Below are positions 11,798 to 61,762 of a stretch of 64,000 nucleotides of DNA, in pieces. Location: contig NW_027272134.1 in NCBI RefSeq assembly GCF_040938485.1, positions 1,178,001 through 1,242,000 of the forward strand. The letters are read 5' to 3'. This DNA is from Diadema antillarum (taxonomy: Eukaryota). The position numbers were made by a program, and so were the translations under genes. Position 1 is the stretch's first letter, and each line of letters begins with the position of its first letter. The notes beneath the pieces were generated by a model. It saw only the letters and a program-made list of their open reading frames with translations. It was not told the DNA's origin and made no database searches.

Positions 11798-11823
11798 AAC
11801 AACAACAACCACAACAACAACAA

Positions 11824-11854
<31 letters not shown>
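11798..11854. repeat. (CAA)n microsatellite
   Basis: Near-perfect CAA run seen directly. Confidence 0.9.
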
Positions 11855-22500: not shown

Positions 22501-23782
22501 ACATTTTGCTATACATAGTGTGTTTTGTATTATCTATAAGTGCAAGTGAACTTTCTAACTTCATTAGATTTGTATTTTTTCTTTCCCCATTGCACCATCT
22601 TGCTGTAAAGGCTGCCTATCTGAAGTCAATAGTCTGCAAAATTGCAACTACTACACAGACCTGATTCCCAAATAATTTCTTCAAGGCTAGTACGCTGGTT
22701 TTGATGTCCTTATCTACAAATCACATTATTCTAATAGCTCTACTTTTAAAAGTGGTGCAAAGACTGAGTTTCCCATGCCTGTATGTCCTTTATTACATCC
22801 AGCATCAGAAAAATTTAGTGTTGAACCCAACAAAGTACACCTGACAAGGAATTAAGTGGATTGCCCCTCACTATAATGTAATAATATGTTCCTTTCTTTC
22901 CAATTACTTCTTGACGAGCCCATTGATTGTCATTTACAAAAATAAGTGCATATATTGGTCAGGTTGACATTTTACATTGTATGTGCCAGTTTGTTTGAGT
23001 AAACTTTTCAGTAGATCAGGTACAAAAACTTGTACTGATCTAATAAGTGGCTACATTGCCGATGCCTTACAATTTATTAGTGTCAACTTCCGCTTGTTTG
23101 GCCTACTTGAAGGGGAAGTTTCCAAAATGTACAATGTGGATGGAGTGAATGCTGTAACATCAGTAGAACACACCATTGAAGTTTGAGAGAAATTAGACAA
23201 TCCGTTCAAAACATATGGAGTTTTAGAATTTCGGCCGCCATTGCTGGATGAGAAGACTATATCACTTCATCACTTCATTGCAGAACAACGATGTAAAAAA
23301 AATATGAAGATAATTCCACGAAGTTTCACTTGTATGAAAAGTACATGTACATGTTCCTTTGACTTGTCACTGACGTATGTTAAGGATTGTAGCATTCCCC
23401 AGCTGCAAGAAGTACTGTAAGTCAATTGCTCTTGCATTGTCATCTTAAAAATTTTAGTTTAAAAACTTCTCATATCTTTTCTTTATGTAGTTGTTCTGCC
23501 ATGTCATCACAAACTGCAGTTGTCTTTTCATCCAGTTATGGCCGCATTTCGACTTTATTCATAACATTTGAATGGATTGTCTAAATTCCTAAAACTTTGT
23601 GTTCCACTAATCAGTGTGAAACGCTGTCACTGATTTCCCTATGAACAATATAAATTCTGGAAAAAATTTGTTTGACATGCATGTGTGCTATATGTTTCAG
23701 GATGTCGTCTATTGTTTAAGGGGTAGATTGATCAACTTGTTGCCAAGATTACCTGTACTTTTGATGTATTAGTATTGGTTAA

Positions 23783-24445: not shown

Positions 24446-25631
24446 TTTTCGCACCACTACTTGCACCATTAGCAGGCATGCTTGATTTTACTTGCAAGAT
24501 GCACTGATGCATTCCCAAGTTTAATATAGTGTGCAATTTGGTCTGTGCACTCACACTTGAATGATGAGATTGCTCTTGGAAAAGACATGCTCACATTCTA
24601 TCAGTCATGTACTTTGTATTTTTTTATTCATTTGCCGACTTCTGAGTGGCGGACTATTTTCGAATGGACCCACTTGTTGTTCTTGTGAAGCTACGCTGAA
24701 GTGACTCAATTTTCTATTTATGCATTTGTCAGGAATGCCAGGCATTTGTTATATAACTACATGTGACAGCTTTACAAGACAGATGTCACTGACTAAATGG
24801 TTTATATAACACTCTTCTGCAGCTGTAAATATAATGAGTTAATGCAGGAGGATACAAACATGCAACCTGCTATGTTTTTAAGGACAAATGTTTTACCGTA
24901 CAGGTGTTATTAGCTGCAAATGTATTGTAGCTGAGATGTATTGGGATTTAATGTTGTAGTTTCATGAAGGTGCCAGACTTGGACCCCATTTACAGTGCAG
25001 GGCTTGGCTGAGCCCGAGCTGAGCCCAGGCTGAGCATGGCCTCAATTGCCACTCACTGTGAACGGGGTCTGAGACTGATTTAGCACTCATGTTTTTTTAC
25101 TGGTTCCTTTTATCAGTAACATCAAGAAATCTCCATTAATACTCCATTCTCCATTAGTCTATTCAGAATTGGGTTATCACAGTGCACGAATTGTGAAGCT
25201 GGGGTGTGTTTGTAGGCATGATTATCATATTTAATTACAACACAAGGTGCATCAAAATCAAGGTTTCCAGATCCCAAAATTGCAGTGTGCTCATTCATAT
25301 GGGATTGGTAAAATGAATCTAGTGATTTTTTAAAGGAATGTTGATTTTTATTGAGGTTGATATGCTGATGTATCAAACATCCTTTGCTGTGATCAATGTA
25401 TCAAAGCTTGTAATGAAAGATGTGTGCCATTAAATACATAATTTATCTATAGAGGGAGAGAGTTCTAGTTCCCAGTCATGTTTTGTATTGTGTCATACAT
25501 CATCACAACAGCATCAACAGATCATATCTCAGCAAGAATATGTCCTTCATTTCAAATCGATCATATGAAATATCTATATCTATGCTTCTGGAGAACGATT
25601 CCTGTTTTTTCTTTTCTGTCTCTGTATCTTG

Positions 25632-43902: not shown

Positions 43903-44640
43903 CTACTCTGAGCTGTAAGGATTCAAAGTTTTTGGCTACAATTTTAGGGTTATCTGACGGGGAAAGTGATGGACGCATTCTCCCAAAAACCAACTTTCTT
44001 CCATTTACTCATGGCTTTTGGAGTAGTCTATGATATAATAATGGTAATGATTTTGTTAATGAAAGTGATAATATGATGAGGATGATGTTGATAGTGATTA
44101 AAATAATGCTAAAGCTAATTATATAGTTGATTATGATGATTCCATGATTGATGTAGACATTTTGTAGTAAAGATGACTCCAGGACTTGATGAAACAGAAT
44201 GATGTTGGCTCTACTTCAAAGTTACGGACTTTTAGCAGCACTCAGCGAGGTTTAAAATATTTTTCCATTATGCAGCATTTCACAGTTTGTAGATTATATT
44301 TAGTATATACTGTGTAAGCAGTTTTGCTAAATTTTTTCCTTTTTTTCTCTCCAAAAGTGAGGGATGGGTTAAAAATCTTGGGAGGTTGGAGAGTATATGT
44401 GTGGAATGCTAAAATTGAAATCATAGAAAGCAATGTGCAGTCATCATGGTATCCGGAGAATTATTTGATTTGATCAGATTAACCCCCCCCCCCCCCCTTA
44501 ATATTTTCTGTTTGAATGTAGTGAAGAGATGTAGGGTCATGATGACGACTAAAATCTGATGGATGTAGCCTATATATTTCTACCAGCAGCTGTCTGATCC
44601 CCCCACCCCCATGTAAGTTTAGGTCTGGGTTATGTTTGAT

Positions 44641-44672
44641 CAAGGAGCTTCAAACACATGGAGATACAACGC
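44641..44672 (+). repeat. Left terminal inverted repeat CAAGGAGCTTCAAACACATGGAGATACAACGC
   Basis: Exact reverse complement of 58818-58849. Confidence 0.97.
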
Positions 44673-44785
44673 TCACTTTCCTTTAGAAGTAAGCTGTGAT
44701 GCCGCCGTCGTAAAACAGTGGGTGGTTGACCCTTATCTAATCTACTGGAATGTCACTCTGACCGCAATTCGAAAGCCCCGCGGAA

Positions 44786-44873
44786 AAATACGTCATCGGA
44801 AGTCAACGCTCTCGCAATGCATTGTGGACAAATACGTCATCGGAAGTCAACGTTCTCGCAATGCATTGTGGAC
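44786..44873 (+). promoter_or_regulatory. Subterminal 44-bp direct repeat x2 upstream of the PHD gene, containing ACGTCA (CRE half-site) and CGGAAGT (ETS-type) motifs
   Basis: AAATACGTCATCGGAAGTCAACG(C/T)TCTCGCAATGCATTGTGGAC twice with 1 mismatch, in a CpG-rich segment about 140 bp upstream of the ATG at 45010. The regulatory role is inferred. Confidence 0.6.
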
Positions 44874-45009
44874 GCGAAGCGATATTCGGTGATGTTTAGC
44901 CATACAGCTCTATGGCGATACTGTACTGTAGCGTGTATTAGCTAGCTAACTCATCGCGCTCGTTAATTGCTTGACAAGCTTCCGTAATTCCGTGGCGGAC
45001 AAAACAAAA

Positions 45010-45262
45010 ATGACTTCGTCTTCACTGACACTGGATGATAGAGACGTGATATGTATTTGTTCCATCCCCAAAACATCTAATCTCATATCCTGTTCTAATG
45101 TTTCGTGTACAATCGGTATTTACCACTCCGAATGTGTTGGACTGCAGCTGCACGGGCACGGGAGTGCTGGAAAATCGGATTGGTTTTGCGAGTTATGCGA
45201 TGCCGATGAGACAGACGACGTATTGGAAGGGGATGTTGAACTTAATTCGGAAACTAAAAAAG
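45010..45262 (+). CDS. Exon 1 of accessory gene (PHD finger and acidic stretch)
   Basis: CIC-x10-C-x4-C-x5-H-x2-C-x15-WFCELC; ATG in aaaATG context; donor AAG|GTACCG. Confidence 0.85.
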
Positions 45263-47633
45263 GTACCGTTGAATTCATTGTTCTTACTGAGTGATATCAT
45301 TACAAAAAAAAAAAAAAAAAATTGATAGGTACAGTCAGTGTCAGCATATGCAGCTGCAGGAGGTGGTGGTCTGGATGATCGCTGAGCAAGTTTTTTTTTG
45401 AACACTGAAAGTTGGATCATTTGAGCTGTAGACTTTACAATACGAAAACCAAGGAGCTTCAAACACACTGTTTGAAGCTCCTTGAAATCCCTGTCTGCCA
45501 CAGATAATATTTTCTGATAATTGATAGTACTTCAGAGAGGTATTAAATAGTAGCCAGTTAATACTTGATTTATAATAGACCTACCACGTCACTAATATTA
45601 ATGATAATCATTTCCATTTGAAAAAAAAATAATAATAATGTGTCTCCAAAAGAAATAGTTACACTTACAATAATACAAATTAATGGTTACAGTAATCAAA
45701 TAACAGTCGTGATGCAATGCTGATTAAAAATAAAAATGATAAGTAATTTACCAATGATAAAAATAATTTAAGCGATAGTCATAAGGATACTGCAGTTACT
45801 GCTGCTGCTAACAAGAAATATGATGGGGGGGGGGGGTTGGTGTCGGGCTTGTATTCAGGGAAAATTTGATATCCGAGTATGTCATTGCAGAATCATTGCT
45901 ACAGTACATGGCATGAACAAGTCTTAAAATGAAAATCCCATAATTTTTATTGTCAATAATGATCTACCTACAGCGTACTAGTAGTGTATTTGACTACTAG
46001 TAATAGTATGTCGAAGTGGCTTTGCACCCTCAGCCTGATTTTGTTTAGGAGCTGACGGAGGGCTCTTGAGAAAAATTAATAAAATGACAAAAATTCTCTT
46101 TCCTTTTCTCTATAGTTATACTTGCTGCTTTGTGCTTGTATGTTTTATTTGCATGTATCAAAATATTAATAGGTCCAATAGGAATCAAGCTGATTACCTC
46201 TTCTTTAATCCTCATCTTCAGATGACCATATGGAACAATCATATGAACAGCATGAACCAGGATCTTCGTCTGATCAACAACCGAAACTGCCTAAGCAACA
46301 ACAGAAGGTGATTCCATGTAAGTACAAGTGTATACCCAAAATTGGGTCCAATTCTGGTCATTTAAGGAAGAGCAATTTGATGAATTTTAAAATCAAAAGG
46401 CATACATGTAGTTCTTAAATGTAACATTGAAAAAAAAATTGAGGAAAAAATAGAAATGACTGGTACTTCACAAATTTAGTTGGTGAATTTAAAAGTACAT
46501 GTATATGAGGTTTCATTCTTTTTTTCCCCCATTTCAATCTAATTTCTCTTTCATCAACAACGTAAACTATATATGTACATTTCTTAATGAAGAAAATTTT
46601 TAAAGCCTGTTGTCCTTTTTCTTTTCTAGTGCACGGCTCCAAGGTCGTTAAGAGTGTCATGGAAGCAGGGTACGACATCTATAAGGAAGCACTTGAAAGG
46701 GCACAAAAGGATGATCATTTAAAAAACTACCCTACAGGCCGAGAAGTCATTAGAGTTTGTGAACTTTTGTTAAAGTCCCCGACCGATGAGAGCAGGAAAT
46801 CAGCCCTTGGACTTGTTGAGAGCGTACATACTTGTGCATGTGCTGGTGATGCATTTCCTGTTGGACCAGCAGCCAACGAGAAAATTTGCAGTGCCTTTCA
46901 CCGCCTTCGAACGCAGACATCTCTACAACATACCTGGCAGACACTTCTTCTTCAGAGCAACATAACATCCTCACCCCAAACTTCACATCTTTCACTTCAG
47001 TATATACTGCGCCAACTTCTTCACATCATCACACACCGGAGACTCATTCAGCCCGATGAAATCCAGACTGATGACTCAGCAAATCTCACAGAGCATGATG
47101 AAAATGTCTTGAGATATGTGGCTGGCTACATCCCTTTCGCATTAAGTAAAAGATACACCAAGACAAACTCCAAATTCTACAGGACTTTACAATCTTGGAG
47201 GGGTTCAGATGAAGACATTGTTGCAGATACATTTCTTGAGTACACATGTACTTGGACGAATCTTGTTAATAGAGGGGGGCTTTTCCGTGTTAAGGACAAT
47301 GTTTACATGCTGTTCCGGGCCATGGAAATTCAAACAAAAAGAACACTTAATATGAATCTTGCTCAATCTCCTGACCTTGGAGGCTTGTTGACCAAAGCTT
47401 TACTGCAAAGTGAACATGTTCTACATTGTTGGACCTCCCTCATTGAAGATTTGACTGAAAGTGAAGCACAAACATTGCTGCTTACTGTTGTAAGATACTG
47501 GGTAAAGATCAGGGTTAATGCCTTTGTACGAGTGTTTCTAAATCTACGCAAAGAGGAACAAGCAAAGAAAAAAAGGAGTAAGAAAATAGCACGCAAAGGA
47601 GAAAAGAGTTTAAGGAAAACTCTTCAGAAGTAA
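45010..47633 (+). CDS. Transposon accessory gene: PHD finger + acidic linker + P-transposase C-terminal-like domain, 450 aa; exons 45010-45262, 46222-46317, 46630-47633
   Basis: Canonical GT-AG introns with matching phases (1 and 1); 253+96+1004=1353 nt with no internal stop. C4HC3 PHD in exon 1; YVAGY, RGGL and KIRV motifs in exon 3. Confidence 0.85.
45450..45484. repeat. 35-bp TIR-to-TIR hairpin (putative excision footprint)
   Basis: CAAGGAGCTTCAAACA-CAC-TGTTTGAAGCTCCTTG = first 16 nt of the TIR and its reverse complement; flanks are not duplicated. Confidence 0.85.
46222..46317 (+). CDS. Exon 2 of accessory gene (Q/E/S-rich linker)
   Basis: Acceptor ctcatcttcag, donor T|GTAAGT; phase-compatible with exons 1 and 3. 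Confidence 0.75.
46630..47633 (+). CDS. Exon 3 of accessory gene (P-transposase C-terminal-like domain)
   Basis: Acceptor ccttttcttttctag; long ORF with ENVLRYVAGY, WTNLVNRGGL, YWVKIRV and a basic tail. Confidence 0.88.
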
Positions 47634-48986
47634 TGAGCGAATCATTTGTGACAATCAGCAACATTGTCCTTAATTTCTACCGGTAGTATAATCTGGGATC
47701 ATTGATGTCAAAAAAACAAAAAATTTTTCAGTTATACAGTTTGAAGTACAACTTTGGTCAACATTCATTCCTAAAATTAAGAACAGATGGAGAGGAGAGC
47801 AATTGTCCATGTATAACAACTGATGAAGCTAAATGCTGTAATGCTGTGATTATTCATGGAATCTTTATTAATGGTGCCTGTCAGTATTGTACGTTGTAAC
47901 ATTGTACATCCATCCTTCAGCAAGCTTTGTATTTGGCAATACACATATTAACAGAAAAGAAGTTTGTTAATGTATACATTAAAAACAGCTAGCACAATGA
48001 AATAGATCCCTAAGTGTTCATTGATTAACCATTCTGGTCACTTCATCTACAGGTCCATTCTTTGCTAGAATACGAGTTTCATAAATTGCTATGTTGGGCA
48101 AGCTGCTGCATTATATCGCTTTGAATTGAGTTAAGTGCCTAACCAACGGAGAAAAATGAAGGGTCGTTTGTACCCATGTGCACATGAGATATCCCCGATC
48201 TGGCTTGGTCCGTACGCTGATACCACCCAGCAGTTACCTGGCAACAGGGTGAATGCACCTGCAATAATGTTGTATTTGCATAGTGTGTTATTGTACAGTG
48301 AACGAGGAGTCTCTCTATTTCTCTCTCTCCTGTTCTTTCTCACCATCTTTCATAATCGCTGCCCCCTTCTTCTTTGTTTTTCTTTCTTAGCATCACCTGC
48401 GTTCCTGTCCGTGTATGTTTTGTTGTGTAACTGTTTTTGTTGTGTAAAATTAGGTTGTCTTGTTGTAAAAACTCTTAATTTATTTATCTTTGTATGAGGC
48501 CCCAATATCAAGTTCGGCTTACTGGGGATCCTCCTGTATGGTACCTTGACTTTTTTGTTTGTTATCATTATGTGTTCGTTCTTTATCACTATGATTTGAT
48601 TACCTGTCATGTGCAAAATCAGCCATAAATTATTATAAATCATGTGTTTACATCTGAAAGTGATCAGAGTTGATTATGTTGTACCATGCAGAAACAATAA
48701 AATGAAATGAAATGAAATGAAATAGTGTTATAGCTTACAATGTTATATAAATTATCTACAAACGAAACAGAATATGACCACTAAAATAATGATGATAATG
48801 ATGATAACAGCTCTGATAAAGATGCATCAATTTTAGATGTAACAAAGATATATTTGACAGCTTGTCCAGTCACAATGCAGGTCTCAAGTAACAGCTTTGC
48901 AGTTGTATTGCTAGACCTTGCCAGTATGTACTAAATGTTGACAAGATACATTTTCATTTTGCAAGTGAAAATTGCCATAGATAATA

Positions 48987-49168
48987 CAGTGCACTCCCGT
49001 TATAACGAACACGGTTATAATATTCCGGTCATAACGAAGTAAAAATTTGGGCTGCAATGTCATCCACTGCATGTATTTCTATTGTTTATTTTCGGTTATA
49101 ATGAAATTCCGATAATAACGAAAGAAAACTGCCGGTCCCGAGGACTTCGTTATAACGGGAGTCCACTG
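48987..49168. mobile_element. 182-bp Tc1/mariner(pogo)-type MITE nested in the P-like element
   Basis: 23-bp TIR CAGTG(C/G)ACTCCCGTTATAACGAA with TA on both sides. Confidence 0.8.
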
Positions 49169-50096
49169 TACTTAAAAAAAAAAATACTTGAAAAAAAAAA
49201 TTCTTAAACCTCCTTCAGACACGATTTGCAATTATCACACAGGTAGCTAAATAGACAGTGACATGAATGTGTAAGCTGATATAATTCGAAGACAAAGTAA
49301 ATGCATCTTTATCAGCAAATTTTGCACCATTCCTGTTCATCTGGAAAAAATAAATAAAATGTGCACATGGTGATGTCAGGACTGTACAGTGTTTATATTG
49401 ATCATGATTTTTTTTTTTTTTTGGTATGAAAGTTACATTGACAGAGCAAGAAGCAACATTCAAGTTGTTATTTATGATATGAAATCAATTATGAAATATA
49501 CAAATGCATAGCATATCACGACCTTTATTTGCTCTCGACAAGGAGCCTGAATAATGGAGAGAAAGAGAGAGAGAGAGAGAAAGAAAGGAAGAGGAGGGAA
49601 TGAGGGCTAGAGAAAAAGTATCAAAATGACAGGACATGAAATTAAAAGAGAAAAATTAGCATTTTCTTTCCCAACAAAAAGTAACAAGTAATCAGGGTCG
49701 GCGAAAAAACATAGCGTGTTTTGACACATGTTTTAAAACATGTCTTAAAACACCTTTTTTTTTTAGCAAAAAAAAAAAAAAAAATGTTTCGAAACACCCC
49801 ATTGACACATCTACTAAACATATGTTTGTCTATGTGAATTGTAATTTTCATTTTTTCAAATGCTTTTCTCCTGACCAGTGCATGAACATAAATCCAAAGA
49901 AAGTAGGAAATCTCTATCTTCTCCTGTATATCTCCCCTCTTTCTTTCTTTCTCTCTCCCTGTACCTCTCTCTCTCTTCCTCTCTCTCTTCTGCCTTTCTA
50001 GCTCTATCACTGACTCTCTTTTGCTCTTTCTCTTATATTCTCTATCTCTCCCCCTCCCACCTCTTTAACATTAGTTCTTCTCACATAAAACCATAC

Positions 50097-50119
50097 CAAG
50101 GAGATTCAGAAGCTCCTTG
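50097..50119. repeat. Excision footprint with perfect 7-bp TSD ACCATAC
   Basis: ACCATAC-[CAAGGAGATTCA GAAGCTCCTTG]-ACCATAC. Confidence 0.85.
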
Positions 50120-51013
50120 ACCATACTAATATTCATATGAAATGTGATACAGTGTATGATTATTTTACAACTCTAGATCCCTGTAACACCTCCTCAATCA
50201 TGATGAAAAGCAGCACAAGTCAATTTTTTTTGGTGATAAATTTGTTACTTTAATAGCATGCAACGCGATATTTCATGACCGTATACCCAGATATGCAATT
50301 CGAGAGTCATGCAACATTTAACAAGTGCATATCAAGCCCCAAATTTAAAACAAACAAAACAAACCCAAAAAAAAAAAAGAGCTTTCACCTACAAATCCAA
50401 TGCAATTTCTGTTGTTAGTCAGAATTCATAAAGAATTATTTTCTTGGAGTAAAAATAAAAATTATAGATTTGTTGTTGATCGAAAAAGCGTTACTGACGA
50501 TTACCTTTAAAACAACACTAATAAAAGTTGAAAACAAATAAATACAGCTGTATACAGTATGAGAAAGTTATTTAAAAAATAAAATACTTGAGAGCAAGTG
50601 GTGGCCCCGCCCCGCCCATGTTTACTTGCATTCAGACTGCAATGTATTGTGTACAGTTTTGTTAGGTTTCTTGCGTGGAGAACTTACACAAATCTGTACA
50701 TGAGGGACCAAGGAGCTTAGCTTGGTGATCATACACACGAGTCAATTTTCATCCATTTCATCTAAGTCAATATAGTAAAATATGAAGTGAGAACATTCAG
50801 GATAGGGATTTCAACATCTTTGAATTCTGTGAAGGGGCATAGATCCAGTGATATTGGCCTCATAAATGAACTGTAAGTACATGAACATTGCACATTCAGT
50901 GCAGCAGTTGTAGCTGTTTATTCAGCACTAACAGCGGTGCAATGGGTCTCTAGTTAGCCGGAGCTAGCGGGGCAGGGTGCTAGGTATAGGACTAAGGAGC
51001 AATAAGGTGACAG

Positions 51014-51039
51014 TAAGGACCTTCAAACAAAGCTCCTTG
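51014..51039. repeat. Excision footprint with near-perfect 7-bp TSD
   Basis: GTGACAG-[TAAGGACCTTCAAACA AAGCTCCTTG]-GTTACAG. Confidence 0.75.
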
Positions 51040-52088
51040 GTTACAGTAGCCTCCTACCTGAAGCTGCACAGTTTCGGTCTCGAAGCTGAGGTACATGTAT
51101 GTTTGACTGTTGATCATTATCATCTAATAAACTATTATGATTTGAAACTTCGCATGTTCAATGTAGGTTTATCATAAAGCAAATGACTACAGTGATAGTT
51201 CAATTCTGTTTCCATGAGGAGCGTGCAAATAGAAGTCTATAGCATACTCGACGTGATGACAGGAATGGACATTCTGAAGACTGAAAATGTGGTCTAATAA
51301 CCTCAACCTATGTGCAAATCAGCAAAATTTCACATCAGAGATATGACCAAGATCTGAAGGGGGGCAATTTAACAATTTAAAAGCTGATTTCAAAAAAGCC
51401 TAGTTAAAGTAGGGTTAATCATCCTTTCAAAAGAAATGCATCAGAAAGGTCAATAACCGAGCTCAATTTTTTTGCCCATTGTATTGAATTGCACTTTTGT
51501 TCCGATTTCACACTGACTTTCAAATAAAATGGAAAATTTAAAGAACTCTTAGAATATACAAAAGAGATGCACGCTTCCATTTACAATTGACTAATTTCAC
51601 TCGTGAAATACAGTAAACGTTGCACAAGGTGACCTTCAAATCAAGTCCAATAGGTCTGCATGTAAGTCAATGCAATAGACATTATGTACGATGTGTCATT
51701 TCCTCGTACAGAAAAAGTCAAATCTTCTCTTTAAATTGAATAGATTTCTGTGATCCCAAGAAATGGATCGAGGCGTGGAGTTACTCGTATAATATCATTT
51801 GTTGAAAAATAATTACTGCTGCATACTCCATAGAAACATCAGTTGAAGTATTATCAGTTTTTTTCTCCAACATTTGTTTAGTCAAAGGAATAAGACTTCA
51901 TTAAGCAAACCAACCAAAAACAGGTTAGAGGAGTTCAAATCTTAGACTTAACATGCTTATTGCTGATTATTGTGCATGCCATGTGCTCGTGTAAATCTGG
52001 CTTCTTATTCAAGAAATAAATCAAAACGTTATTTCACATGTCGTGAAAACAAATGAGAATCACAGGCAAATGTCAAGATTGCAAACAT

Positions 52089-52375
52089 TCATCGCTTTCT
52101 CTTTCTACTCTGCAAAGGAGTAGAATCCACAGCAGTTTTTCGTTTTTGTGACTTCACATTAGCTTTTGCTGAGACTGCAATGCTTGAACCTGCTACATGC
52201 AGTGGCAGAATGTTTGAGCCAAACTGATGAACATCAGGGTTGTCAAACCGTCCTCCAACTCCTCGCTGACGACTGAAGTACTCTTCCAAAGGATCTTGGC
52301 TGAATTTTTCTGAAAGAACAAACTCCACACCATCCTCCAAGAGAAGCTCCTTGGCAAGTTGAACAAATGAGCGCA
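52089..52375 (-). CDS. Transposase exon 6 (catalytic Glu, SQDPLE; basic C-terminal tail RKRKR)
   Basis: Acceptor ttaataccacag; phase 1 restores VRSFVQLAKELL. Confidence 0.9.
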
Positions 52376-55300
52376 CTGTGGTATTAACAAGACACACACA
52401 CAAAAAAAAAATGTGAAAACACTCTGAAAGAAATGTTTATGGCAAAATAAAAGGGAAGAAAGAGCATATGATCATGGATGTTGTATTGACTAAGAGTAAT
52501 AAACCTGTAAAAAAAAAAAAAAAAAAACACAAAGTACAAAATATCTTGATAAGTTCATGCAATGAGCTTCTTTTTTAAGTTCCTTGGTTCATGCATGAAA
52601 GATAATACAAATCAATATACAAACCATGAAAAATCTCCAGAATTTAAATAACCACGCGAATATTAAGTGCAGGTAGAGAAGAAATGGGAATAAAACAAAA
52701 CATGTGAGTTCTTTATTGCACCTAACATTAGAAAAATGCAATGTCTCTTATCCATACTTTTTCCTTTTCTTTTCATTTTTTTATGAAATAAGGAATAAAC
52801 AAGAAATAGGAAATCATGTTTAGAACGTACATGTATTATAGTACATTTGCATGCATGTGTGTGTGTGTGTGTGTGTGTGTGCGTGCGTGTGTGTGTTTGC
52901 ATTCAAATTTGTCTGTTCTTGAAGATAATGTTCTTATTTTGTTCTAAATTGAACATGGAATTTGTATCAATACTAGTAGTTAAAAGTAGTTCTGAGAATG
53001 TCTGCGCTAATGTGGCAATGTGCATGTGCTATGTCTATGGTGCAATATAGGTAGCCATCTCTGTCAACCTACCCTGAGACAAACACTCTCCCAGGCCCAT
53101 CCCACCTCCATTGAACAAAACCTACAGCCAGTCGGGCACGCACAAACAAGCTCCGCCCACTTGGCCTGTCACTAAAATATTAAAGCAGCGATTGGTTGAC
53201 CAAGGAGTTCTGGCTTGACATGGATAAAGTATGGATGTGCTGTGTGTATGGATAAAGTATATGGATCGATGTGCTGTGTGTATACATGTATACATGTGTA
53301 TGTATTCGACATGCGTGCAGAGCGGTGCATGCTTACCTGCAGCGGGCCAGGGACGGGGTTCTTCGACATGCCGATTTTTTTGTTCTCTAAATGTAATGAG
53401 AATGCCAGACAAATCTTCTTCGGCTCAAGTGATGTAAACTACGTGTATTATGTACAAAAGGGACTGAATGTTTTACTTCGACACAGCCGAAATTCGACTC
53501 TCGTACTTCGGCTTATCCAAATATTTCTTAGAGAAAACACATAGGGAAAAATCGGGACTTCTTATTTTGCTTCGAGTTAAGTGATTTTCGACTCACTCGA
53601 CGTCGACTTATCCGAGGTTTACTGTACGTTATAATCACCTGTTAATCTCAGGCCATCAAGAGTTGCTTTACTGAGACACAGCTTCTGGCGATCAGCTGCC
53701 TTAAGACCGGGGACAAGCATGCCTTCAGACTCCCACTCATCCAGTAAGCCAAGGAAGTCTTCCTCTAGCCACTAAAAGGAAATAAATTAGAAGGAAATCA
53801 GATTATTAGGAATTAACACAGTCTGAAGCTCCTTGATAATACTCATATTAAAAAAAAAAATAATAATTTATGCAAAAGCCTTTCCCCCTTATTTAAAAAA
53901 GGGGGGGGGGGTGCAGCAGAAATTTTTCTTGTAGCTTAATGTTGGCCTAATGGAACACTGAGGTCTAGTTTCATCTGCTGAGGTCAATTAAAATGTGTAC
54001 TTGCACATGTATACCAGACTCCCTTTTGTCTTGAAGGGTTAACAACAAATGTGTCTAAATCTCCCAATTTTAACTTCTTCATTGTTCATCTACAAGTACA
54101 TCACAACATACCACAGAGCTTAAAACTGTTTTAAGCTCCTTGAACATACCAACAATCTCCAGTCATCCACAGATTTGTAAGGGGCAAGAGCTGGATTTCG
54201 GGATTTGATGTGCTGGGAGATGTTCGACACATTCATGCAGTCAAAGAACTGGTTGAAATATTCTATGAATGTGATGGTGCTGGATGTCTCCAATGGTTTA
54301 CTGCTTTGCTGTTGTTGCATCTTCAGAGCACTAGCCATAGATGTGCTGAGAACCTGTAAATAGAAAAAAAAGTTCAGATACATTCATGAACATTCCACTA
54401 TTTCTACAGACCCTGTGTGAAACAATTGGTGTGGGGTGTATGTGTGCAGGTGTATGTGTTTTGATATCGATTATCTAAAGATAAGAGTCTTACATGTACT
54501 ATTAATGGTAGATTATTTGAACCAAGGAGCTTAATTGTAGATTATCTGAACCAAGGAGCTTAAAACAGACGACTACTGTTTGAACATAAATGCATGTTCT
54601 ATAATTGAATACTTTGGAAAAATAAAAAAGCACTCAAAATAAAGCTATGATTTCACATAAATAGGACAAAAACACAGAAATCAATGAAATTAGATTACAT
54701 GCACAATTTAAGTTATTATAAGTACACATATTTTTAAATGCTTCAAGAGAAAACTAATCCACATTAACAAGGAGCTTGTTTGAAACTCCTTGACATTTCT
54801 GAATTTTGCTATTAACCCATAGAGGTACATGGCTTTGCACGGGTATAAATCAATCAGCTTTTTTACTTGAAATCCAATTTTGATGAGATTTTCAGCATTA
54901 TGCTTTTTTTATTTTTTTATTTTTTTATTCAAATCAACTTTTTGCTGGGGTGGACTTCCCCTTTAAGAGAAACTGCAAAAGTGTCTCCTCTGTGGGTTAA
55001 TGGATGTAGTGACAACCTTGCTTTGCTGCTATATGATGTTTACAGCAATTACATAATATTCTTACCTGTGCAGCAAGGGAAACTCGCATGCGTGATGAAG
55101 GAGTCAGGTTAAGATGTTCTGCGGTGATTTTGTTGAGCATTCGCAGTCCTTGTGCTGTACCATCTGGATTGATGTGCCCAGTGTCCCAAGCGTTGACATC
55201 AAGGATATGTCTCCAGGAAATTGGAGCACCTCTAAGCTACAGAGAATAACAAGTAATATTTAGAATTACCATCAAATGATCTTACACAAGAAACATAATG

Positions 55301-58300
55301 CTACACTAACAGAAATTGTCAAAGGAAATGATTTAGCACTATAATTAAGGACTAATAAGAGGCTACTTGGTGAATTGAAGTCTGAAACATTTTTTTTTTA
55401 TAAAAAACAAACAAACATATATATATGAAAAAAAAACAAACATATATATATGATATACAAGAATTCTTAAATCTACATGAATATCAAAAGTAAGAAATGT
55501 AAGACCAAGAAGTACTTTAGAGACATTACCTACGTGTACGTGATAATCTGAATAACTTTTCTACTGACACAGCATCATTACTATTTTGTACTTAGAGGAT
55601 GAATCAATTCGATAATTCCAAAACTATTTACCATCATATTTCTGGTGTTGTTATGGCTGCCAGAGTTTTCGAAGTTGTTTCTTGTTGTTTTGATCAGGTG
55701 AGGGACATCAGAGATAAAATATATCTTGTGGTCAGGGTTGAAGGGGTTTATTGTGAAGTGCTCTGAACTGCACAATTTGTAGAATTTCCTGTTTGTGGTG
55801 GCCCCATCTGACACAAATGCACGAACATGGAATCCTGCAAAATGCAGTCGCTCCACCCCCTCCCAGATAATGTGGTACAACTGATCGGCTGTCATGGCAT
55901 CACATGGAAAAAAACCAACTGGAGTGTGAAGATTATGAAAGATCCCTCGGATCATGATGGTAAGTGCATGTGTTGCAATGTTCTGCGTAGTGTTGTCTTC
56001 TGCCTCTTTTCGATACTTCAAAAGTTCATTGTTAATGTCTCCAAGGTCTGTAAATCCGACCAGTTTACCTCTTGACGTGTAGACAAGGCCTGATTTCACC
56101 TTCATTTCATCAAAGACGACCGATACATTTTTCTGATGGGGTGGCAGAGACTCAATGTTTATGTCCTTCGCAATCTTGGAAAGGAAGTCTGAAGAGTATC
56201 CAGGGTTGATGTCAAAGCAGTGTGTGTAGTTGAAGAGTGTGTTTTTATGGGGAAGGTGGAGATACCCGGAAGACCGAAGAAGGTCATATGCAGCAGGGCT
56301 TTTGGAGTGAATTGCAATGCAGAGGCGGAGAATTGAAGGATGCCAACGCATCTGGCGGGGTGGCTTTGTGAAAAACTTCTGTTGTTCCTCCCACAGAAGC
56401 TTTGCAGGTGACCCTTCTGGGAAGTCGGCATTGTGGGCTTGAAAAATATCCTTGAATGACTTGCTCACTTTCTTATCGATGATTTCCCCTTCCTTTCGGA
56501 TCATCTTGTGCAAGGACTTGCGTAGCCGCACTAAGTTCTCCCCCATGGCCTTCCTTTCCTTACTCATTTTTTCCAAGCGATTACGCATCTCCGTTTTTGA
56601 CAAGTGAGCATGTGGCTTGAAGCTTGACGTACTCGCTGTTTCTTTCTCCTTCTTTAACCTTTTGCGAAGAATGCCAAGATCCGTCCTGTAGATGGTACAG
56701 GTACCGCACCGTCCAACATCACCTTTGAGGATGGGGCAACTGTTGTGTCTCAATGACACATTCAGAGAGTCATATTTACTCGGATGATGGTATACAGGAC
56801 GGTTCATAACATCTTCTGGGCTAATATCACCAAAGTCTTCATTGCCTGGGCAGACATGTGACTTCATGATTGCTTCTAAAAACTCTAGAATCTGCGATGG
56901 AGACAAATTGGGCGGAAAATCTTTGAGAATGTCAATTCCCGGATCTATTACCTTGCCATAGTGGCGAACCCTCCAACTTCCGTCACAATTAATGATGCAG
57001 CATTTCTCCGACATGCCTTCATCATCCAACTCGACAATGATCACCTTCCCCTCTCTCTGATTGAACACCATCTTTCCTTGGAGCACATCCTGCGCATTCA
57101 TCACTGCATCTAGAATGCCACCATCTTCCTCTTCATGCGAAACACAATATTTGCAGTCCGGTGCATGAGGCTCAAAATCAGGAACAACAATGCTGATACT
57201 TGCAGTTTGCCTCTTTCGTTGCTTCTCACGCCATCTCGATAACTTCTTCGAGCAAAGCCCACAAACCGAAGGAGGATGAATATCATCAATGTCGAGAGAA
57301 ACATCGATGTCAAGAGCCCTTTTGATAACAGCAGACCATGTTGACTTTGCTTGGTGTCGCTTATTTGGCAATGTGATACCATCGCTACCACACAATCTAC
57401 AGATGTCCTGAAGTTTTTCCTTGTGTCTGTCCTTGTCGTCTAAAAAAACAATAATAACAATAACAACAACGATAATAATAACAGTAATAATAATTTTAAA
57501 AAAATAATTCTATAATAATTCGGTGATACTTAATCACATCAGTTTTCTAAAGCTCTATGAAGCTGAATATAATGTACACAACAAAATCACATATATTTGT
57601 TTTAAAAAAATCTTTTATGTGTCATGTTGTTTAATAGTATTTTATAAATTCACATGATAAAGTAAACCTAATATAATAAGAAAAATAACTGAATGAAATG
57701 AACATATAAAATTTCACATTTACACTTTGGTCACTATTCAATTATTTTTCAATAATCTAAAGCAAAACAAGCAACAAAATACTGGTTCAAGTGAAACATG
57801 ATGTAGCTCACAGGATATTGACTGAAATTATGCATGGGATCAGCGCACGGGATAGCCATTAAATTTACAAAGTTAGAGCGTCGATTCGGGTAAACATGCA
57901 GTCATTTGTACATCCACAAGAAGATTAAGATCGAGAACCTTGTCGGACTACAGTACGCCTGCTTGTACTTTGTTTTTAATGTTCTGAATGGAAGCTATGA
58001 ACATGTAAATTCCAGACCATGCGCCACATAGGCAGGCTGGAGGATTCAACTACCGATGTCATCTCAGTGACACTTTTGTACAGTCCCATATATAAGACTT
58101 TGAGTGATAAAAAAAGCTACTTTTAAATAGACGCTACGTAAACATCACACCAAAATGACTCACAAATATCACTTCTTCAACGATTATTTTCAATTGCAAC
58201 AACATAAAACATGAAAAAAATGTATGACCTACGGATAATTTTCCATAACTCGAGGAATACGAAACACAAGAGTGGAAAAAAAAGCTGAAAATCTCGGCCA

Positions 58301-58502
58301 ACAAGCATTCGAAACTCGGCTTTCCTGAAGTTGGCCGCTGCTGGCCGCAGTGCAGATGAAAGCGTTTGTAAAGACGAGACTTCGATCTTCAAATTCATAT
58401 ATTGCGCATCATGTGGATATTTGCGGAATTTTACTTATCATAATCATAACTTAGCTAATTAGATATTCATAAAAACACATGATAACATCATAACTCACCC
58501 AT
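52089..58502 (-). CDS. P-superfamily (THAP9-like core) DDE transposase with RAG1-N-terminal-like zinc domain, 868 aa; exons 58502-58499, 57439-55632, 55236-55066, 54353-54150, 53771-53639, 52375-52089
   Basis: All junctions GT-AG and phase-consistent (1,0,0,0,1); 2607 nt with no internal stop. P-type motifs RWHP..SPAAY..LR, VFDEMK, SDGA, SDVPHLIK, HLNL..MRVSLAAQVLS, FDCMN, FSQDPLEEYF..GG..DNP. Confidence 0.9.
52560..52586. repeat. Excision footprint with perfect 7-bp TSD GTTCATG
   Basis: GTTCATG-[CAATGAGCTTC TTTTTT AAGTTCCTTG]-GTTCATG. Confidence 0.8.
53639..53771 (-). CDS. Transposase exon 5
   Basis: Acceptor atttccttttag, donor G|GTGATT; WLEEDFLGLLDEWE...LSKATLDGLRLT. Confidence 0.85.
54112..54142. 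repeat. Excision footprint whose perfect TSD (AACATAC) is the splice donor of transposase exon 4
   Basis: AACATAC-[CACAGAGCTTAAAAC T GTTTTAAGCTCCTTG]-AACATAC; the reverse complement GTATGTT is the intron start at 54149. Confidence 0.85.
54150..54353 (-). CDS. Transposase exon 4
   Basis: Acceptor ttttctatttacag, donor G|GTATGT; VLS...FIEYFNQFFDCMN. Confidence 0.88.
54768..54792. repeat. Excision footprint with partly decayed TSD
   Basis: ACATTAA-[CAAGGAGCT TGTTTGAAACTCCTTG]-ACATTTC. Confidence 0.7.
55066..55236 (-). CDS. Transposase exon 3 (insertion/GTP-binding domain region)
   Basis: Acceptor ttattctctgtag, donor CAG|GTAAGA; ISWRHI...KITAEHLNLTPSSRMRVSLAAQ. Confidence 0.88.
55632..57439 (-). 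CDS. Transposase exon 2 (RAG1-like zinc domain, second Cys/His cluster, coiled coil, HTH-like region, first two catalytic Asp)
   Basis: Acceptor ttgtttttttag, donor ATG|GTAAAT; 1808-nt open frame. Confidence 0.92.
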
Positions 58503-58572
58503 TTTTTGTCCGATTTTCGTGATTTTTTTTGGAGAACGAAGAGAAAAGCCAGCAGAGTCGATTGAACATAAA

Positions 58573-58584
58573 TGCGCATGCGCA
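58573..58584. promoter_or_regulatory. Perfect NRF1-type palindrome TGCGCATGCGCA upstream of the transposase ATG
   Basis: Consensus match about 70 bp upstream of the ATG at 58502 in a CpG-rich subterminal region; function inferred. Confidence 0.55.
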
Positions 58585-58817
58585 TGGGATACCCCTACAC
58601 ACTGCGCAAGCATCGACATGCTACAGCTCCCCAGCCCACATCATGCTAACACGGTCGAGTGAGCAAACACTACAGCACCGAGCGGCATCATACCTCTCGG
58701 ATAAAGGAAGGGGAAATGGGACCCAGGGGACCAAGGGGACCGTGTTATCAGTGAAATATCTTTACTTTCTCCTCGCGCACTAATCCGCTGGCATGCTGTG
58801 CATTTTTTCCTGCTCCG

Positions 58818-58849
58818 GCGTTGTATCTCCATGTGTTTGAAGCTCCTTG
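58818..58849 (-). repeat. Right terminal inverted repeat (32 bp)
   Basis: GCGTTGTATCTCCATGTGTTTGAAGCTCCTTG followed by TSD GTTTGAT. Confidence 0.97.
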
Positions 58850-59201
58850 GTTTGATGTGATTGATGGAGAGTGTGCTGGTAATCTGTCAAGGAGGGAACA
58901 CAAATCCTCACAGATGGGATCAGATCCAGTTTGACTTGATTGATGTGCACATCCAGGGGTTTGGGAGATTTTGTTCTTATTGGCCATATCTTCCATCACC
59001 CTGTCAGAGTTAGTATGCCTCCCTCCACCTATCCAGTCTCAGATCAGTTTGCAGAGAGGGGTCATTGAACACTTTCAAGCTCCATTAGTCATCACTTCTG
59101 CACCTTATTTTTTTTTTCCAGCTCATCTCTGAGAAGCGAAGGTATGAATACAGATGCCCACTATTTTCGTTGAATACCTGTGATGTTGGGATGATCTTTA
59201 A

Positions 59202-59624: not shown

Positions 59625-60235
59625 TAATACCCTCCCCCTCCCCCCCCCCCCCCTTACACAGACGTTCAGTACCAGCACCTTTCAAATGTTTTCATTGAGT
59701 ATGAAAAAGTGTCCAGAAACAAACTACGCGTGTATGCTGTCGGTTCCAATTCCTGAATTGTGCTATCATCATGATTTATGCATCGAAAAAGAAATGTAAT
59801 ATCGGTCTTTAACTGCACCATGACTGCCATGTCTACCATGTGGTTATTGTGTCAAAAATATATTTGATAACACCGCACTGGATGTATATCCTGTAGAAAA
59901 GGTGTTGCTATACGTATATCTAAATGTTCATTACTATATAGCAGCACTACAGTTGTCATTCATGTTTTGAAATTGCCATATATTTGCAATTCCATAACAA
60001 CTTCACCATTTTTGTGCTGTTATTGAGTGTATCAAAATGTGACAATTTCAAGAAACAAATTAGTTCAGTGTTATACATATATTTTGACTTTATTTCTGTG
60101 TGATTAGGCCCAGAAAACATTTTGCAGGATAACTTCATTACCAATAACCACTAGCTACTATTCAATGAAACATTATATTCAAAGGCATGATTTACCATTT
60201 GCAGATGAAACAAAACCCCAGCATTAGTGCTCTAA

Positions 60236-60320
60236 CCCGTTAAGGACGAGTCCTCAGTATACTCGGGCAGGTGTCTATGGGAAATGCTTGTTGTAGCAAA
60301 ATCAGTCCATCCTCAACGGG
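60236..60320. mobile_element. 85-bp piggyBac-like MITE copy
   Basis: CCCGTTAAGGACGAGTCC...CATCCTCAACGGG, colinear with 59202-59286. Confidence 0.75.
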
Positions 60321-61762
60321 TTGAAATATTTCTAAAATGTGAGTTAGGGATAGAAATGACCAATGTAAAAAATTGAACCAGTATAATCAATGTTAAGTAT
60401 TGGTAGATATACAAAATGTGAACAATAGATATGATAAAATTGTTTCCAGACTATAAACCATCTACAGTTACGGTTTTATGAGAAAAAATAGTGATATCTC
60501 CTTATATTTTAGACTTTATTGCAAAAATTTTATATGGTAGGATGTTTTGTGATACAACTGACCTACAGATATGCATCAAAAGTGATATCTTGAACATTTT
60601 TTAAAGCACTGCTCTCAAAGGTAAACCGGACCTTTAATCTGCAATCAGCAGACATTGAAGGGCATGTATCTGTCTGTATGAATGTTTTCTTGGTTTGATC
60701 TTTTTATATACAATTAAAGAGAAAAAACAATCTCAGTCTGATAACTTTTGTCAAAAACAAATCTCCCAAAAAGCCCAGTTTTGATATTTATGATGTAAAG
60801 AGAACAGCACATGATTTTAATTCCAATGGTGTTATTGGTATAATGTTTACAATGATAAAGTTCTACCTTTAAATGATGGTAATGAAAATAAAGTTAATAT
60901 GAAGACTGTCATGACTCTGATGCCATCAACATAGAAGAATATTAGTAGAATCAGTAATATGTCATTTTGTGTGACCAAATATGACAGCTATAATGAGGAA
61001 TTTCATTGTGTCTTTGTTAGTGGTACGATGAATTCGATTTTGCATCTTTCATAATCATATTATCATGTAGCATGCTTTGTCAGCACAAATACTGCTTCCC
61101 TTCCACAGAAGTCATGAATGATCTGACTAAAATTCTTGCATGTCTTAGACTCAGCACTACAAATAAACTTACAATGTACCTTTAAATGATTGTCAAATTC
61201 TTCTTCTTTTATTTTTGCCAGATATACTGTCAGCCAGATATACATTGTATACTGTCAGATATACTGTCAGCGTGTAACGTGTGTGTGTGTTTGTGTGATA
61301 TTAGTGCAAAATTTAAACTGTCTTTTTTTTTCTGATGAGGGTAATTTTGTTTTAACGCGCTAATGGCTTATGACACTCCAGATTGAGCCAAGTCTGAACA
61401 TTGAGCATACTATATTAATAGACACTCTCCCCTTGAAGGGTCGTGATGTGCCGAAGCAGGTGTGTTTTCAATTTTCAGCGTTATTGAAGAGACATGGCAA
61501 GACAATGTATTCATGAAACAATTAAGAAGTCTTAAAGGGTATATGACTGTAAACTACACTAGTATGTATGTCATTCATCATCCCAGATGAAGAAAATTAT
61601 TAAGAAAAATTGCATTTTCACCTCATACTTTTCCGTCTTCATTCTTTGAATGCTGTATCATGCAGCAAAGACAGTGTTATTACTTACGAATGAAAGTGCT
61701 ATTCATATGTTAATATTCATTTCGACACGTCTAAGGTGCTTCAGTGAGAGTATTGGAGAATA

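What the first reader, a model, noticed from the sequence alone, without database searches (positions are those of the whole stretch)
50090..54799. The element carries a fossil record of its own self-insertions: clustered TSD-flanked excision footprints
Seen: TIR-end fusions flanked by 7-bp direct repeats at 50097 (ACCATAC x2), 51014 (GTGACAG/GTTACAG), 52560 (GTTCATG x2), 54112 (AACATAC x2) and 54768 (ACATTAA/ACATTTC). Complex or partial ones lie at 54523-54578 (TTTGAAC x2 with duplicated filler), 50709 and 53821, plus the hairpin at 45450. All are in introns or the spacer, and by eye I found none in the roughly 50 kb outside the element. Inference: repeated insertion into its own copies (local hopping or homing) followed by excision, with only non-coding hits surviving. 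This is direct evidence of past mobility, mechanism and target preference.
Basis: partly seen in the sequence, partly recalled or inferred. Interest (0 to 1): 0.85.

Follow-up and report, generated by a model that had tools for sequence, protein, structure and literature searches.

The report
Transposon carrying its own excision scars
A 14-kb P-element-type jumping gene in the sea urchin Diadema antillarum carries about ten scars in its introns and spacer, left when copies of the same family jumped in and out again; this is a natural record of behaviour known from fruit-fly P elements, not a new kind of system.

Summary
The window is Diadema antillarum DNA. It holds a 14.2-kb transposon (44641-58849) with perfect 32-nt terminal inverted repeats (TIRs) and a 7-bp target-site duplication (TSD). 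It encodes a P-element-type transposase and a conserved accessory gene.

Six fusions of the two TIR tips and four to five partial ones lie inside it. All are in introns, the 5' region or the spacer. None lies in the other 49.8 kb of the window. Five of the six are flanked by 7-bp repeats: three perfect, one with one mismatch, one with two.

Each scar is 9-18 nt of the left tip joined to 4-16 nt of the right tip, with almost no filler. This is the expected scar of a P-type 17-nt staggered cut.

- All scars are identical in two further copies (99.3-99.8% identical, at other loci). They are therefore inherited ancestral events, and no empty-site allele was found.
- Two scars of the same family lie outside copies elsewhere in the genome. 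The enrichment is about 20-fold, not absolute.

Two other sea-urchin families show the same thing, each with its own tip only. The TSDs favour GT at the start, as in Galileo.

The mechanism is known; the natural record is new. Interest is moderate.

The parts
44641..58849 (.). Whole element (family A), 14,209 bp, nested in an intron of a host SNF2-type helicase gene
   Evidence: Perfect 32-nt TIRs (I3). The 7-bp TSD GTTTGAT lies at 44634-44640 and 58850-58856. Two more copies start at the same first base at unrelated loci. Host gene.
44641..44672 (+). Left terminal inverted repeat
   Evidence: (I3), 100% complementary to 58818-58849
58818..58849 (-). Right terminal inverted repeat
   Evidence: I3
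52092..57443 (-). Transposase gene with 5 coding exons (57443-55629, 55236-55063, 54356-54150, 53771-~53640, ~52379-52092). It is P-element type, with an N-terminal region like the RAG1 N-terminus.
   Evidence: tblastn of NCBI model P0001. Pfam TNP-like RNaseH_N, GBD and RNaseH_C, plus RAG1_imp_bd. PDB hit to Drosophila P transposase 6p5a, E 3.9e-23.
46230..47633 (+). Accessory gene (363 aa, no Pfam domain), convergent with the transposase gene
   Evidence: P0013 mapped. Homologues sit in the same position in families B and C.
45450..45484 (.). Largest scar: 18 nt of left tip + 1 nt + 16 nt of right tip. No clean TSD.
   Evidence: Shared by L003 and L005, which have 14 extra nt just to its right.
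49539..49563 (+). Diverged solo left end of about 25 nt, running into a GA-rich microsatellite. Weak.
   Evidence: Identical in L003 and L005.
50090..50126 (.). Scar 50097-50119 (12+11 nt) with perfect TSD ACCATAC, in the spacer
50709..50725 (.). Partial scar: left tip of 10 nt plus a damaged right tip. No TSD.
51007..51046 (.). Scar 51014-51039 (16+10 nt), TSD GTGACAG / GTTACAG, in the spacer
52553..52593 (.). Scar 52560-52586 (11+16 nt, 4 mismatches), perfect TSD GTTCATG, in intron 4
53201..53212 (.). Weak candidate scar (flanks GGTTGAC / GCTTGAC) inside a 798-bp insert (52827-53624) that only this copy has
   Evidence: Read by eye, not significant on its own.
53815..53835 (.). Partial scar: right tip of 12-15 nt, left side truncated, in intron 3
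54105..54149 (.). Scar 54112-54142 (15+16 nt) with perfect TSD AACATAC. On the coding strand this 7-mer reads GTATGTT and is the 5' splice site of intron 3.
54516..54585 (.). Complex scar 54523-54578: two left tips, with about 27 nt of the left junction copied again, perfect TSD TTTGAAC, in intron 2
54761..54799 (.). Scar 54768-54792 (9+16 nt), TSD ACATTAA / ACATTTC, in intron 2

Best explanation
The motifs are donor-site scars. Copies of the same transposon family, full-length or shorter relatives with the same ends, inserted into an ancestor of this element. Each insertion duplicated 7 bp of target.

The copies were later cut out by the family's P-type transposase. That enzyme cuts one strand at the element tip and the other about 17 nt inside. 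Each flank therefore keeps up to about 17 nt of the TIR as a 3' overhang. End joining of the two overhangs leaves 'TSD - left-tip remnant - right-tip remnant - TSD'.

The scars pile up in the element because this kind of transposase reinserts close to its donor. The nearest target is the copy on the sister chromatid or homologue, or a site tethered by transposase bound to the element. Only hits in introns, spacer and 5' region were compatible with a lineage that kept amplifying. The accumulated scars then travelled with the element to new loci.

Shown: the anatomy of the scars, the TSDs, the 18-nt upper bound, the family-specific enrichment, the inheritance by three copies, and the P-type transposase.

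Inferred: the 17-nt stagger in this enzyme, local hopping or homing as the cause of clustering, and selection as the cause of the non-coding-only pattern.
For: - The element has TIRs and a 7-bp TSD.
- The transposase is P-type: Pfam TNP-like RNaseH_N, GBD and RNaseH_C, and PDB 6p5a at E 3.9e-23.
- There are six tip fusions. Three have perfect 7-bp flanks, one has one mismatch and one has two.
- All internal TIR matches start at TIR nt 1-2 and none exceeds 18 nt.
- The scars split into 9-18 nt of left tip plus 4-16 nt of right tip, with 0-1 nt of filler. This matches the 17-nt staggered cut reported for P transposase (PMC7776569, PMC10983969).
- Enrichment: 11 exact tip hits in the 14.1-kb interior against 3 in 77 kb of Diadema non-element DNA. 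Counted as events, about 8 of 10 lie inside, binomial p = 1e-5.
- Family specificity: A, B (L001) and C (Lytechinus, L007) each hold only their own tip inside: 11, 4 and 3 exact hits, with no cross-family hits.
- Perfect TSDs also flank scars in B (L001 9056) and in C (L007 17768 and 21128).
- Three copies at unrelated loci are 99.3-99.8% identical. Their transposase coding blocks show 0 frameshifts and 0 new stops. The family was therefore mobile recently.
- 12 of 16 TSDs start with GT or end with AC (p = 5e-9), like Galileo's GTAGTAC (PMC2775673).
- In the laboratory, P elements hop locally and insert into themselves (PMC7776569; PMC4744444: 3 self-insertions among 39 mapped hits).
Against: - No empty-site allele was found. 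All scars are identical in the three reachable copies, so insertion is inferred from the TSDs alone.
- The outside sample is small (about 77 kb), and it does contain two scars.
- The scar at 45450 has no TSD. Those at 50709 and 53821 are one-sided.
- A related Hydractinia element of 7.2 kb has no internal scars.
- Some scars differ from the present tip at 2-4 positions. The donors could have been diverged relatives, or the scars may be far older than the copies.
- The non-coding-only pattern is only mildly significant: about 0.74^11 = 0.04.
Confidence: 0.8

Rival explanations
1. The scars are real, but there is no self-targeting. The family, or its short non-autonomous relatives, was simply very active. 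The apparent clustering would then reflect a small sample, or a general preference for open, germline-expressed chromatin that the element happens to offer.
For: - Two scars lie outside copies in only about 77 kb.
- P elements are known to favour promoters and open chromatin (PMC7776569).
- All events are ancestral, so the chromatin context at the time is unknown.
Against: - Density is about 20-fold higher inside (p = 1e-5).
- The B element in the same genome is similar in size and layout but holds no exact A tip (one match with one mismatch). The A element holds no B tip. A general hot-spot model predicts cross-family hits.
- The external scar in L005 is only 4.2 kb from a copy, as local hopping predicts.
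Confidence: 0.12
2. The motifs are not excision scars. They would be insertions of tiny mobile units (micro-MITEs of 14-35 bp made of two fused tips) that transpose as such.
For: Both readings give TSD-flanked tip pairs.
Against: - Sizes run from 14 to 35 nt. The junctions differ in every case and look like different splits of the same two tips. They do not look like copies of one master sequence.
- None holds anything beyond TIR nt 18.
- In P elements the transposase binds internal sites next to the 31-bp repeats, not the tips (PMC7776569).
Confidence: 0.04
3. The motifs are chance palindromes, or built-in functional motifs of the element such as protein-binding or RNA-hairpin sites, unrelated to insertion.
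For: One tip-like 10-mer, at 52344, lies in a coding exon. It has no partner and no TSD, and is probably such a chance match.
Against: - None of 100 shuffles reached the observed count.
- Three perfect and two near-perfect 7-bp flank repeats exist in A, and more in B and C.
- The same structure occurs at two loci outside any copy.
Confidence: 0.02

Closest known systems
Drosophila P element: donor-site footprints, local hopping and self-insertion
   Same: - The transposase core is homologous (PDB 6p5a, E 3.9e-23; the three TNP-like Pfam domains).
- The scars keep remnants of both TIR tips between both TSD copies. The upper bound of 18 nt fits the 17-nt stagger (PMC7776569).
- Nearby reinsertion and insertion into the element itself are seen in laboratory screens (PMC7776569, PMC4744444).
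   Different: - The TSD is 7 bp, not 8.
- The element is 14 kb with two convergent genes, against 2.9 kb with one gene.
- No THAP domain was detected. The N-terminus resembles the RAG1 N-terminal region instead.
- Here the evidence is a natural, inherited series of scars, not laboratory events.
Galileo (with Newton and Kepler), P superfamily, Drosophila buzzatii group
   Same: 7-bp TSDs with a GT...AC-type consensus, GTAGTAC (PMC2775673). Here 12 of 16 TSDs start with GT or end with AC.
   Different: - Galileo has very long, internally repetitive TIRs. Here the TIRs are 29-40 nt.
- The host phylum and the gene content differ.
Nested same-family insertions in other cut-and-paste transposons (for example maize double Ds; nested MULEs, PMC3903597)
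   Same: A transposon serves as the target of its own family.
   Different: In those cases the nested copy is still in place. Here only excision scars remain, and there are many in one lineage. My searches of the paper library found no report of such a series inside an autonomous element. That search is not exhaustive.
N-RAG-TP of Aplysia (transposon-borne RAG1 N-terminal-like sequence; PMC8355894)
   Same: The transposase N-terminus matches Pfam RAG1_imp_bd (E 6e-9). It also matches RAG1 residues 139-215 in PDB chains (E 3e-5).
   Different: Here that region is fused to a P-type catalytic core. I did not fetch or compare N-RAG-TP itself. This is a side observation, not part of the finding.

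Membership tests
P superfamily of DNA transposons (P element / THAP9 / Galileo) | Transposase with an RNase H-like catalytic domain interrupted by a GTP-binding insertion domain | tested here: met
   Pfam PF21787 (E 7.8e-26) and PF21788 (E 4.4e-9). PF21789 at E 9e-5, just under its cut-off. Exons were searched apart. PDB: Drosophila P transposase 6p5a, E 3.9e-23.
P superfamily of DNA transposons (P element / THAP9 / Galileo) | Terminal inverted repeats and a 7-8 bp target-site duplication | tested here: met
   32-nt perfect TIRs. 7-bp TSD GTTTGAT. 7 bp is the Galileo value (PMC2775673).
P superfamily of DNA transposons (P element / THAP9 / Galileo) | N-terminal THAP zinc-finger DNA-binding domain | tested here: not met
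   No THAP hit at E <= 0.01 in the 604-aa first exon. The N-terminus hits RAG1_imp_bd instead. This is a departure from the canonical P/THAP9 architecture, not from the catalytic family.
P superfamily of DNA transposons (P element / THAP9 / Galileo) | 17-nt staggered donor cleavage | tested here: inconclusive
   Indirect only. No remnant exceeds 18 nt in 8 family-A scars (16 sides scored) or in the other internal tip matches; by eye none exceeds 16 nt in the B and C scars. The largest is 18+1+16 nt. This is compatible with the stagger but is not a biochemical demonstration.
P superfamily of DNA transposons (P element / THAP9 / Galileo) | GTP as cofactor | not testable with these tools
   Only the presence of the GTP-binding insertion domain can be seen.
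Cut-and-paste excision footprints (donor-site scars) | Both copies of the TSD are retained and flank the remnant | tested here: met
   3 perfect, 1 with one mismatch and 1 with two in the window, plus the complex scar with perfect TTTGAAC. Perfect or near-perfect flanks also at L005 4230, L001 25181, L001 9056, and L007 17768 and 21128.
Cut-and-paste excision footprints (donor-site scars) | The remnant is made of the outermost bases of both element ends, with junctions that vary from event to event | tested here: met
Cut-and-paste excision footprints (donor-site scars) | An allele or orthologous site with the empty, single-copy target | tested here: inconclusive
   All scars are identical in the two other copies reachable, L003 and L005. 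No more diverged copy could be fetched.
MITE-like micro-elements | Copies share size and internal sequence by descent from a master | tested here: not met
   Sizes run from 14 to 35 nt and every junction differs.

The most novel reading that the evidence does not exclude
Self-insertion could be a built-in property of this echinoderm clade of two-gene P-type transposons. The transposase, perhaps with the conserved accessory protein, would tether incoming copies to resident copies of the same family. That would make a 'safe harbour' that spares host genes. The own-tip scars in three families would be its signature. The same data would also be the first natural evidence that the roughly 17-nt staggered cut is conserved from flies to echinoderms.
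Probability: 0.25. Interest if true: 0.65.

Novelty: new member of a known kind. Interest (0 to 1): 0.5.

Why it matters
Local hopping, self-insertion and the TIR-retaining footprints of P elements are known almost only from Drosophila laboratory genetics. Here a wild sea-urchin transposon lineage has recorded the same three behaviours in its own introns, and two sister families repeat the pattern.

This gives a sequence-only way to read cleavage geometry (18 nt or less per side), target preference (GT-start 7-mers) and reinsertion distance. It works for transposases that have never been studied at the bench. It also makes the question of how local P-type reinsertion is in nature testable by genome scans.

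It does not reveal a new mechanism.

Tried and rejected
- **Empty-site search.** I fetched two more copies through the accessory protein. They proved 99.3-99.8% identical and carry every scar. No pre-insertion allele was found.
- **More copies through the transposase.** Its 90% cluster has a single member. The S. purpuratus, Apostichopus and one Lytechinus relative are not on record for look-up.
- **De novo scan** for any short palindrome with 7-bp flanks. The background is too high to be useful: 1-9 per 64 kb in simulations.
- **Unexcised nested copies** (tip pairs 60-8000 bp apart with matching flanks). None found. The one hit pairs two separate scars with similar TSDs.
- **Idea that the introns were created by these insertions (introner-like).** Rejected. 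Intron positions are conserved between families A, B and C, and the element tip supplies no AG acceptor.
- **Autointegration of an excised copy into itself.** Rejected by reasoning. It gives circles or inversions, not a TSD-flanked nested copy in the chromosome.
- **The PHD-like ORF at 45011-45262.** The Pfam hit is weak (E 0.0085, below cut-off), and it does not match the accessory proteins of relatives. Left open.
- **Sequences not built.** I built no joined-exon model of my own. Exons were searched apart by reference, and the splice model used is NCBI's P0001 as returned by the tool.
- **Masked stretch.** The N run at 43649-43902 was left untouched.


Full report
**What the window is.** The 604-aa ORF at 55581-57395 (minus strand) is 100% identical to an NCBI protein of the sea urchin Diadema antillarum (P0001, 868 aa). 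The locus lies on contig JBFRCO010001246.1 of GCA_040938485.1, inside a host SNF2-type helicase gene. TIR below means terminal inverted repeat; TSD means target-site duplication.

**The element.**
- A perfect 32-nt inverted repeat bounds 44641-58849 (I3).
- Both ends are flanked by GTTTGAT.
- NCBI's model maps to five coding exons on the minus strand.
- Searched exon by exon, these hit the three Pfam domains of P-element-type transposases: RNaseH_N at E 7.8e-26, the GTP-binding insertion domain at E 4.4e-9, and RNaseH_C at E 9e-5.
- P0001 hits the solved Drosophila P transposase, 6p5a, at E 3.9e-23.
- No THAP domain was detected. The N-terminus resembles the RAG1 N-terminal region instead.
- A second gene (363 aa, no known domain) runs convergently at 46230-47633.

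**Checking the observation.**
- The terminal 10-mer with at most one mismatch occurs 18 times, against 4.5 expected. None of 100 shuffles reached 18, and all hits fall within the element.
- There are 11 exact internal hits and none in the other 49.8 kb.
- A scan for a plus-strand tip followed by a minus-strand tip within 70 nt gives six real pairs, all internal. Simulated sequence gives 0.9 pairs.
- The flanking 7-mers are identical at 50097, 52560 and 54112. They differ at one position at 51014 and at two at 54768.
- The complex site 54523-54578 has perfect TTTGAAC flanks. It holds two left tips, and about 27 nt of the left junction is copied again. This is what templated end joining produces.
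- 45450-45484 has no clean TSD.
- 50709 and 53821 are one-sided remnants. 49539 is a diverged solo left end. 53201 is a weak candidate.
- The 10-mer at 52344 lies in exon 5 with no partner. I take it as a coding or chance match.
- On the gene model, all scars lie in introns 2-4, the spacer or the 5' region.

**Anatomy of the scars.**
- All internal matches to the element ends begin at TIR nt 1-2, and none is longer than 18 nt.
- A best-split analysis resolves each family-A scar into 9-18 nt of left tip plus 4-16 nt of right tip, with 0-1 nt of filler. The largest, at 45450, is 18+1+16 nt.
- P transposase makes an unusual 17-nt staggered cut at each end (PMC7776569, PMC10983969). From established knowledge of that reaction (Beall and Rio 1997), each donor flank keeps up to 17 nt of the repeat as a 3' overhang. 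Joining of the two overhangs gives exactly this kind of scar.
- The upper bound seen here is therefore indirect evidence that the stagger is conserved in this distant relative.

**Other copies.**
- The accessory protein led to two further loci in the same assembly.
- L003 and L005 align to the element from its first base at 99.3-99.8% identity. Their flanks match neither each other nor the window, so these are three transposed copies.
- Their transposase coding blocks show 0 frameshifts and 0 new stops.
- Every scar is identical in all three copies, apart from two single-base differences in the complex one. The scars therefore predate the last round of amplification and travel with the element.
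- Several scars differ from the present tip at 2-4 positions, and two TSDs have diverged. The copies differ by under 1%. This suggests the scars are much older than the copies, although error-prone repair or diverged donors could also account for it.

**Scars outside copies.**
- L001 (another contig) has a 23-nt fusion at 25181-25203 with flanks ATGATAT / ATGACAT.
- L005 has a 14-nt one at 4230-4243 with perfect CCTGCAC flanks, 4.2 kb from the copy.
- In about 77 kb of Diadema non-element DNA there are 3 exact tip hits, against 11 in the 14.1-kb interior. That is roughly 20-fold.
- Counted as events, about 8 of 10 lie inside, p = 1e-5.

**Replication in other families.**
- L001 holds a second Diadema family, B (transposase 33% identical). 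The element is at 7956-22885, its TSD is GTGAAAC, and it has the same two-gene layout.
- B contains fusions of its own tip at 9056 (perfect GTATAAC flanks), at 14990 and 18705, and a complex site at 14799-14907. All are non-coding.
- A Lytechinus variegatus relative, C (L007 9798-22269, TSD CTAAGAC), has own-tip scars at 16128, at 17768 (perfect GCCATAT flanks) and at 21128 (perfect GTTTATG flanks).
- The tip-by-locus matrix is diagonal. Own-tip exact hits are 11, 4 and 3, and cross-family hits are 0.
- A Hydractinia relative (L006 9176-16345, TSD GTAAAGC) shares the first seven bases of the family-A tip. It has no internal scars.

**Target preference.** Of 16 TSDs collected, 12 begin with GT or end with AC. 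Chance expectation is 11%, giving p = 5e-9. Galileo, a P-superfamily element with 7-bp TSDs, has the consensus GTAGTAC (PMC2775673). One hit duplicated the GTATGTT 5' splice site of intron 3 (54149-54143 and 54111-54105, minus strand).

**Interpretation.**
- The scars are excision footprints of same-family copies that had inserted into the ancestral element.
- Their concentration and family specificity fit the local hopping and self-insertion documented for P elements in the laboratory (PMC7776569; PMC4744444, 3 self-insertions among 39 mapped hits).
- The non-coding-only pattern is as expected if disruptive hits were lost, but it is only mildly significant (about 0.04).
- Whether clustering comes from proximity (sister chromatid or homologue) or from active tethering cannot be told from sequence.

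**Limits.**
- No empty site was found.
- The outside sample is small.
- The stagger is inferred.
- The rest of the genome could not be scanned with these tools.

**Novelty.** The element is a new member of the P superfamily, with a two-gene layout and a RAG1-N-terminal-like region. The scars follow a known mechanism. My literature searches found no earlier report of a natural autonomous element carrying a series of its own family's footprints, but the library is incomplete.

Noticed in passing
window 57395-57140 (minus strand; aa 12-87 of the first exon): The N-terminus of this P-type transposase matches Pfam RAG1_imp_bd (E 6e-9). It also matches residues 139-215 of RAG1 in PDB chains (E 3e-5). 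The same Pfam pair is precomputed for relatives from Apostichopus and for three unnamed ENA proteins. It may relate to the RAG1-N-terminal-like transposon N-RAG-TP of Aplysia (PMC8355894), which I did not compare.
   Followed up: partly
window 46230-47633 (+); L001 19714-22539 (-); L007 10001-12929 (+): A conserved accessory gene with no known domain lies convergent to the transposase in families A, B and C. A versus B is 31% identical, E 1e-51. Homologues are found in Lytechinus, Acanthaster, Apostichopus and Branchiostoma. Its function is unknown.
   Followed up: partly
L006 9176-16345 (Hydractinia symbiolongicarpus) versus window 44641: The first seven bases of the TIR tip (CAAGGAG) and the 7-bp GT-start TSD are shared between a cnidarian element and Diadema family A, although the transposases are only about 32% identical.
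   Followed up: partly
window 52827-53624: A 798-bp insert in intron 4 is present only in this copy and absent from L003 and L005. It holds a GT microsatellite and the weak scar candidate at 53201. Its origin was not determined.
   Followed up: no
L003 17018-17530 and L005 17023-17535 (corresponds to window ~54050): An insert of about 514 bp ending in a GAAATT-type tandem tail is shared by L003 and L005 but absent from the window copy. It looks like a retroposon, and suggests those two copies are each other's closest relatives.
   Followed up: no
window 44787-44874: Two tandem 44-bp units lie about 150 bp inside the left end. They are a candidate subterminal transposase-binding repeat.
   Followed up: no
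window 45011-45262 (+): An ORF near the left end has a cysteine/histidine pattern that hits the Pfam PHD finger weakly (E 0.0085, below cut-off). It is not part of NCBI's accessory-gene model and does not match the accessory proteins of relatives.
   Followed up: partly
window 40216-40309 and 60233-60326: A 94-nt inverted repeat (80% complementary) lies about 4.4 kb to the left and 1.4 kb to the right of the element. These are probably two copies of an unrelated short repeat in opposite orientation.
   Followed up: no
window 43649-43902: A run of 254 N lies about 740 bp upstream of the element's left end.
   Followed up: no
window 50090-50096 and 54143-54149: Two separate scars have nearly the same target 7-mer, ACCATAC and AACATAC. 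Both read GTATG.. on the other strand, so the target motif resembles a 5' splice-site consensus.
   Followed up: partly
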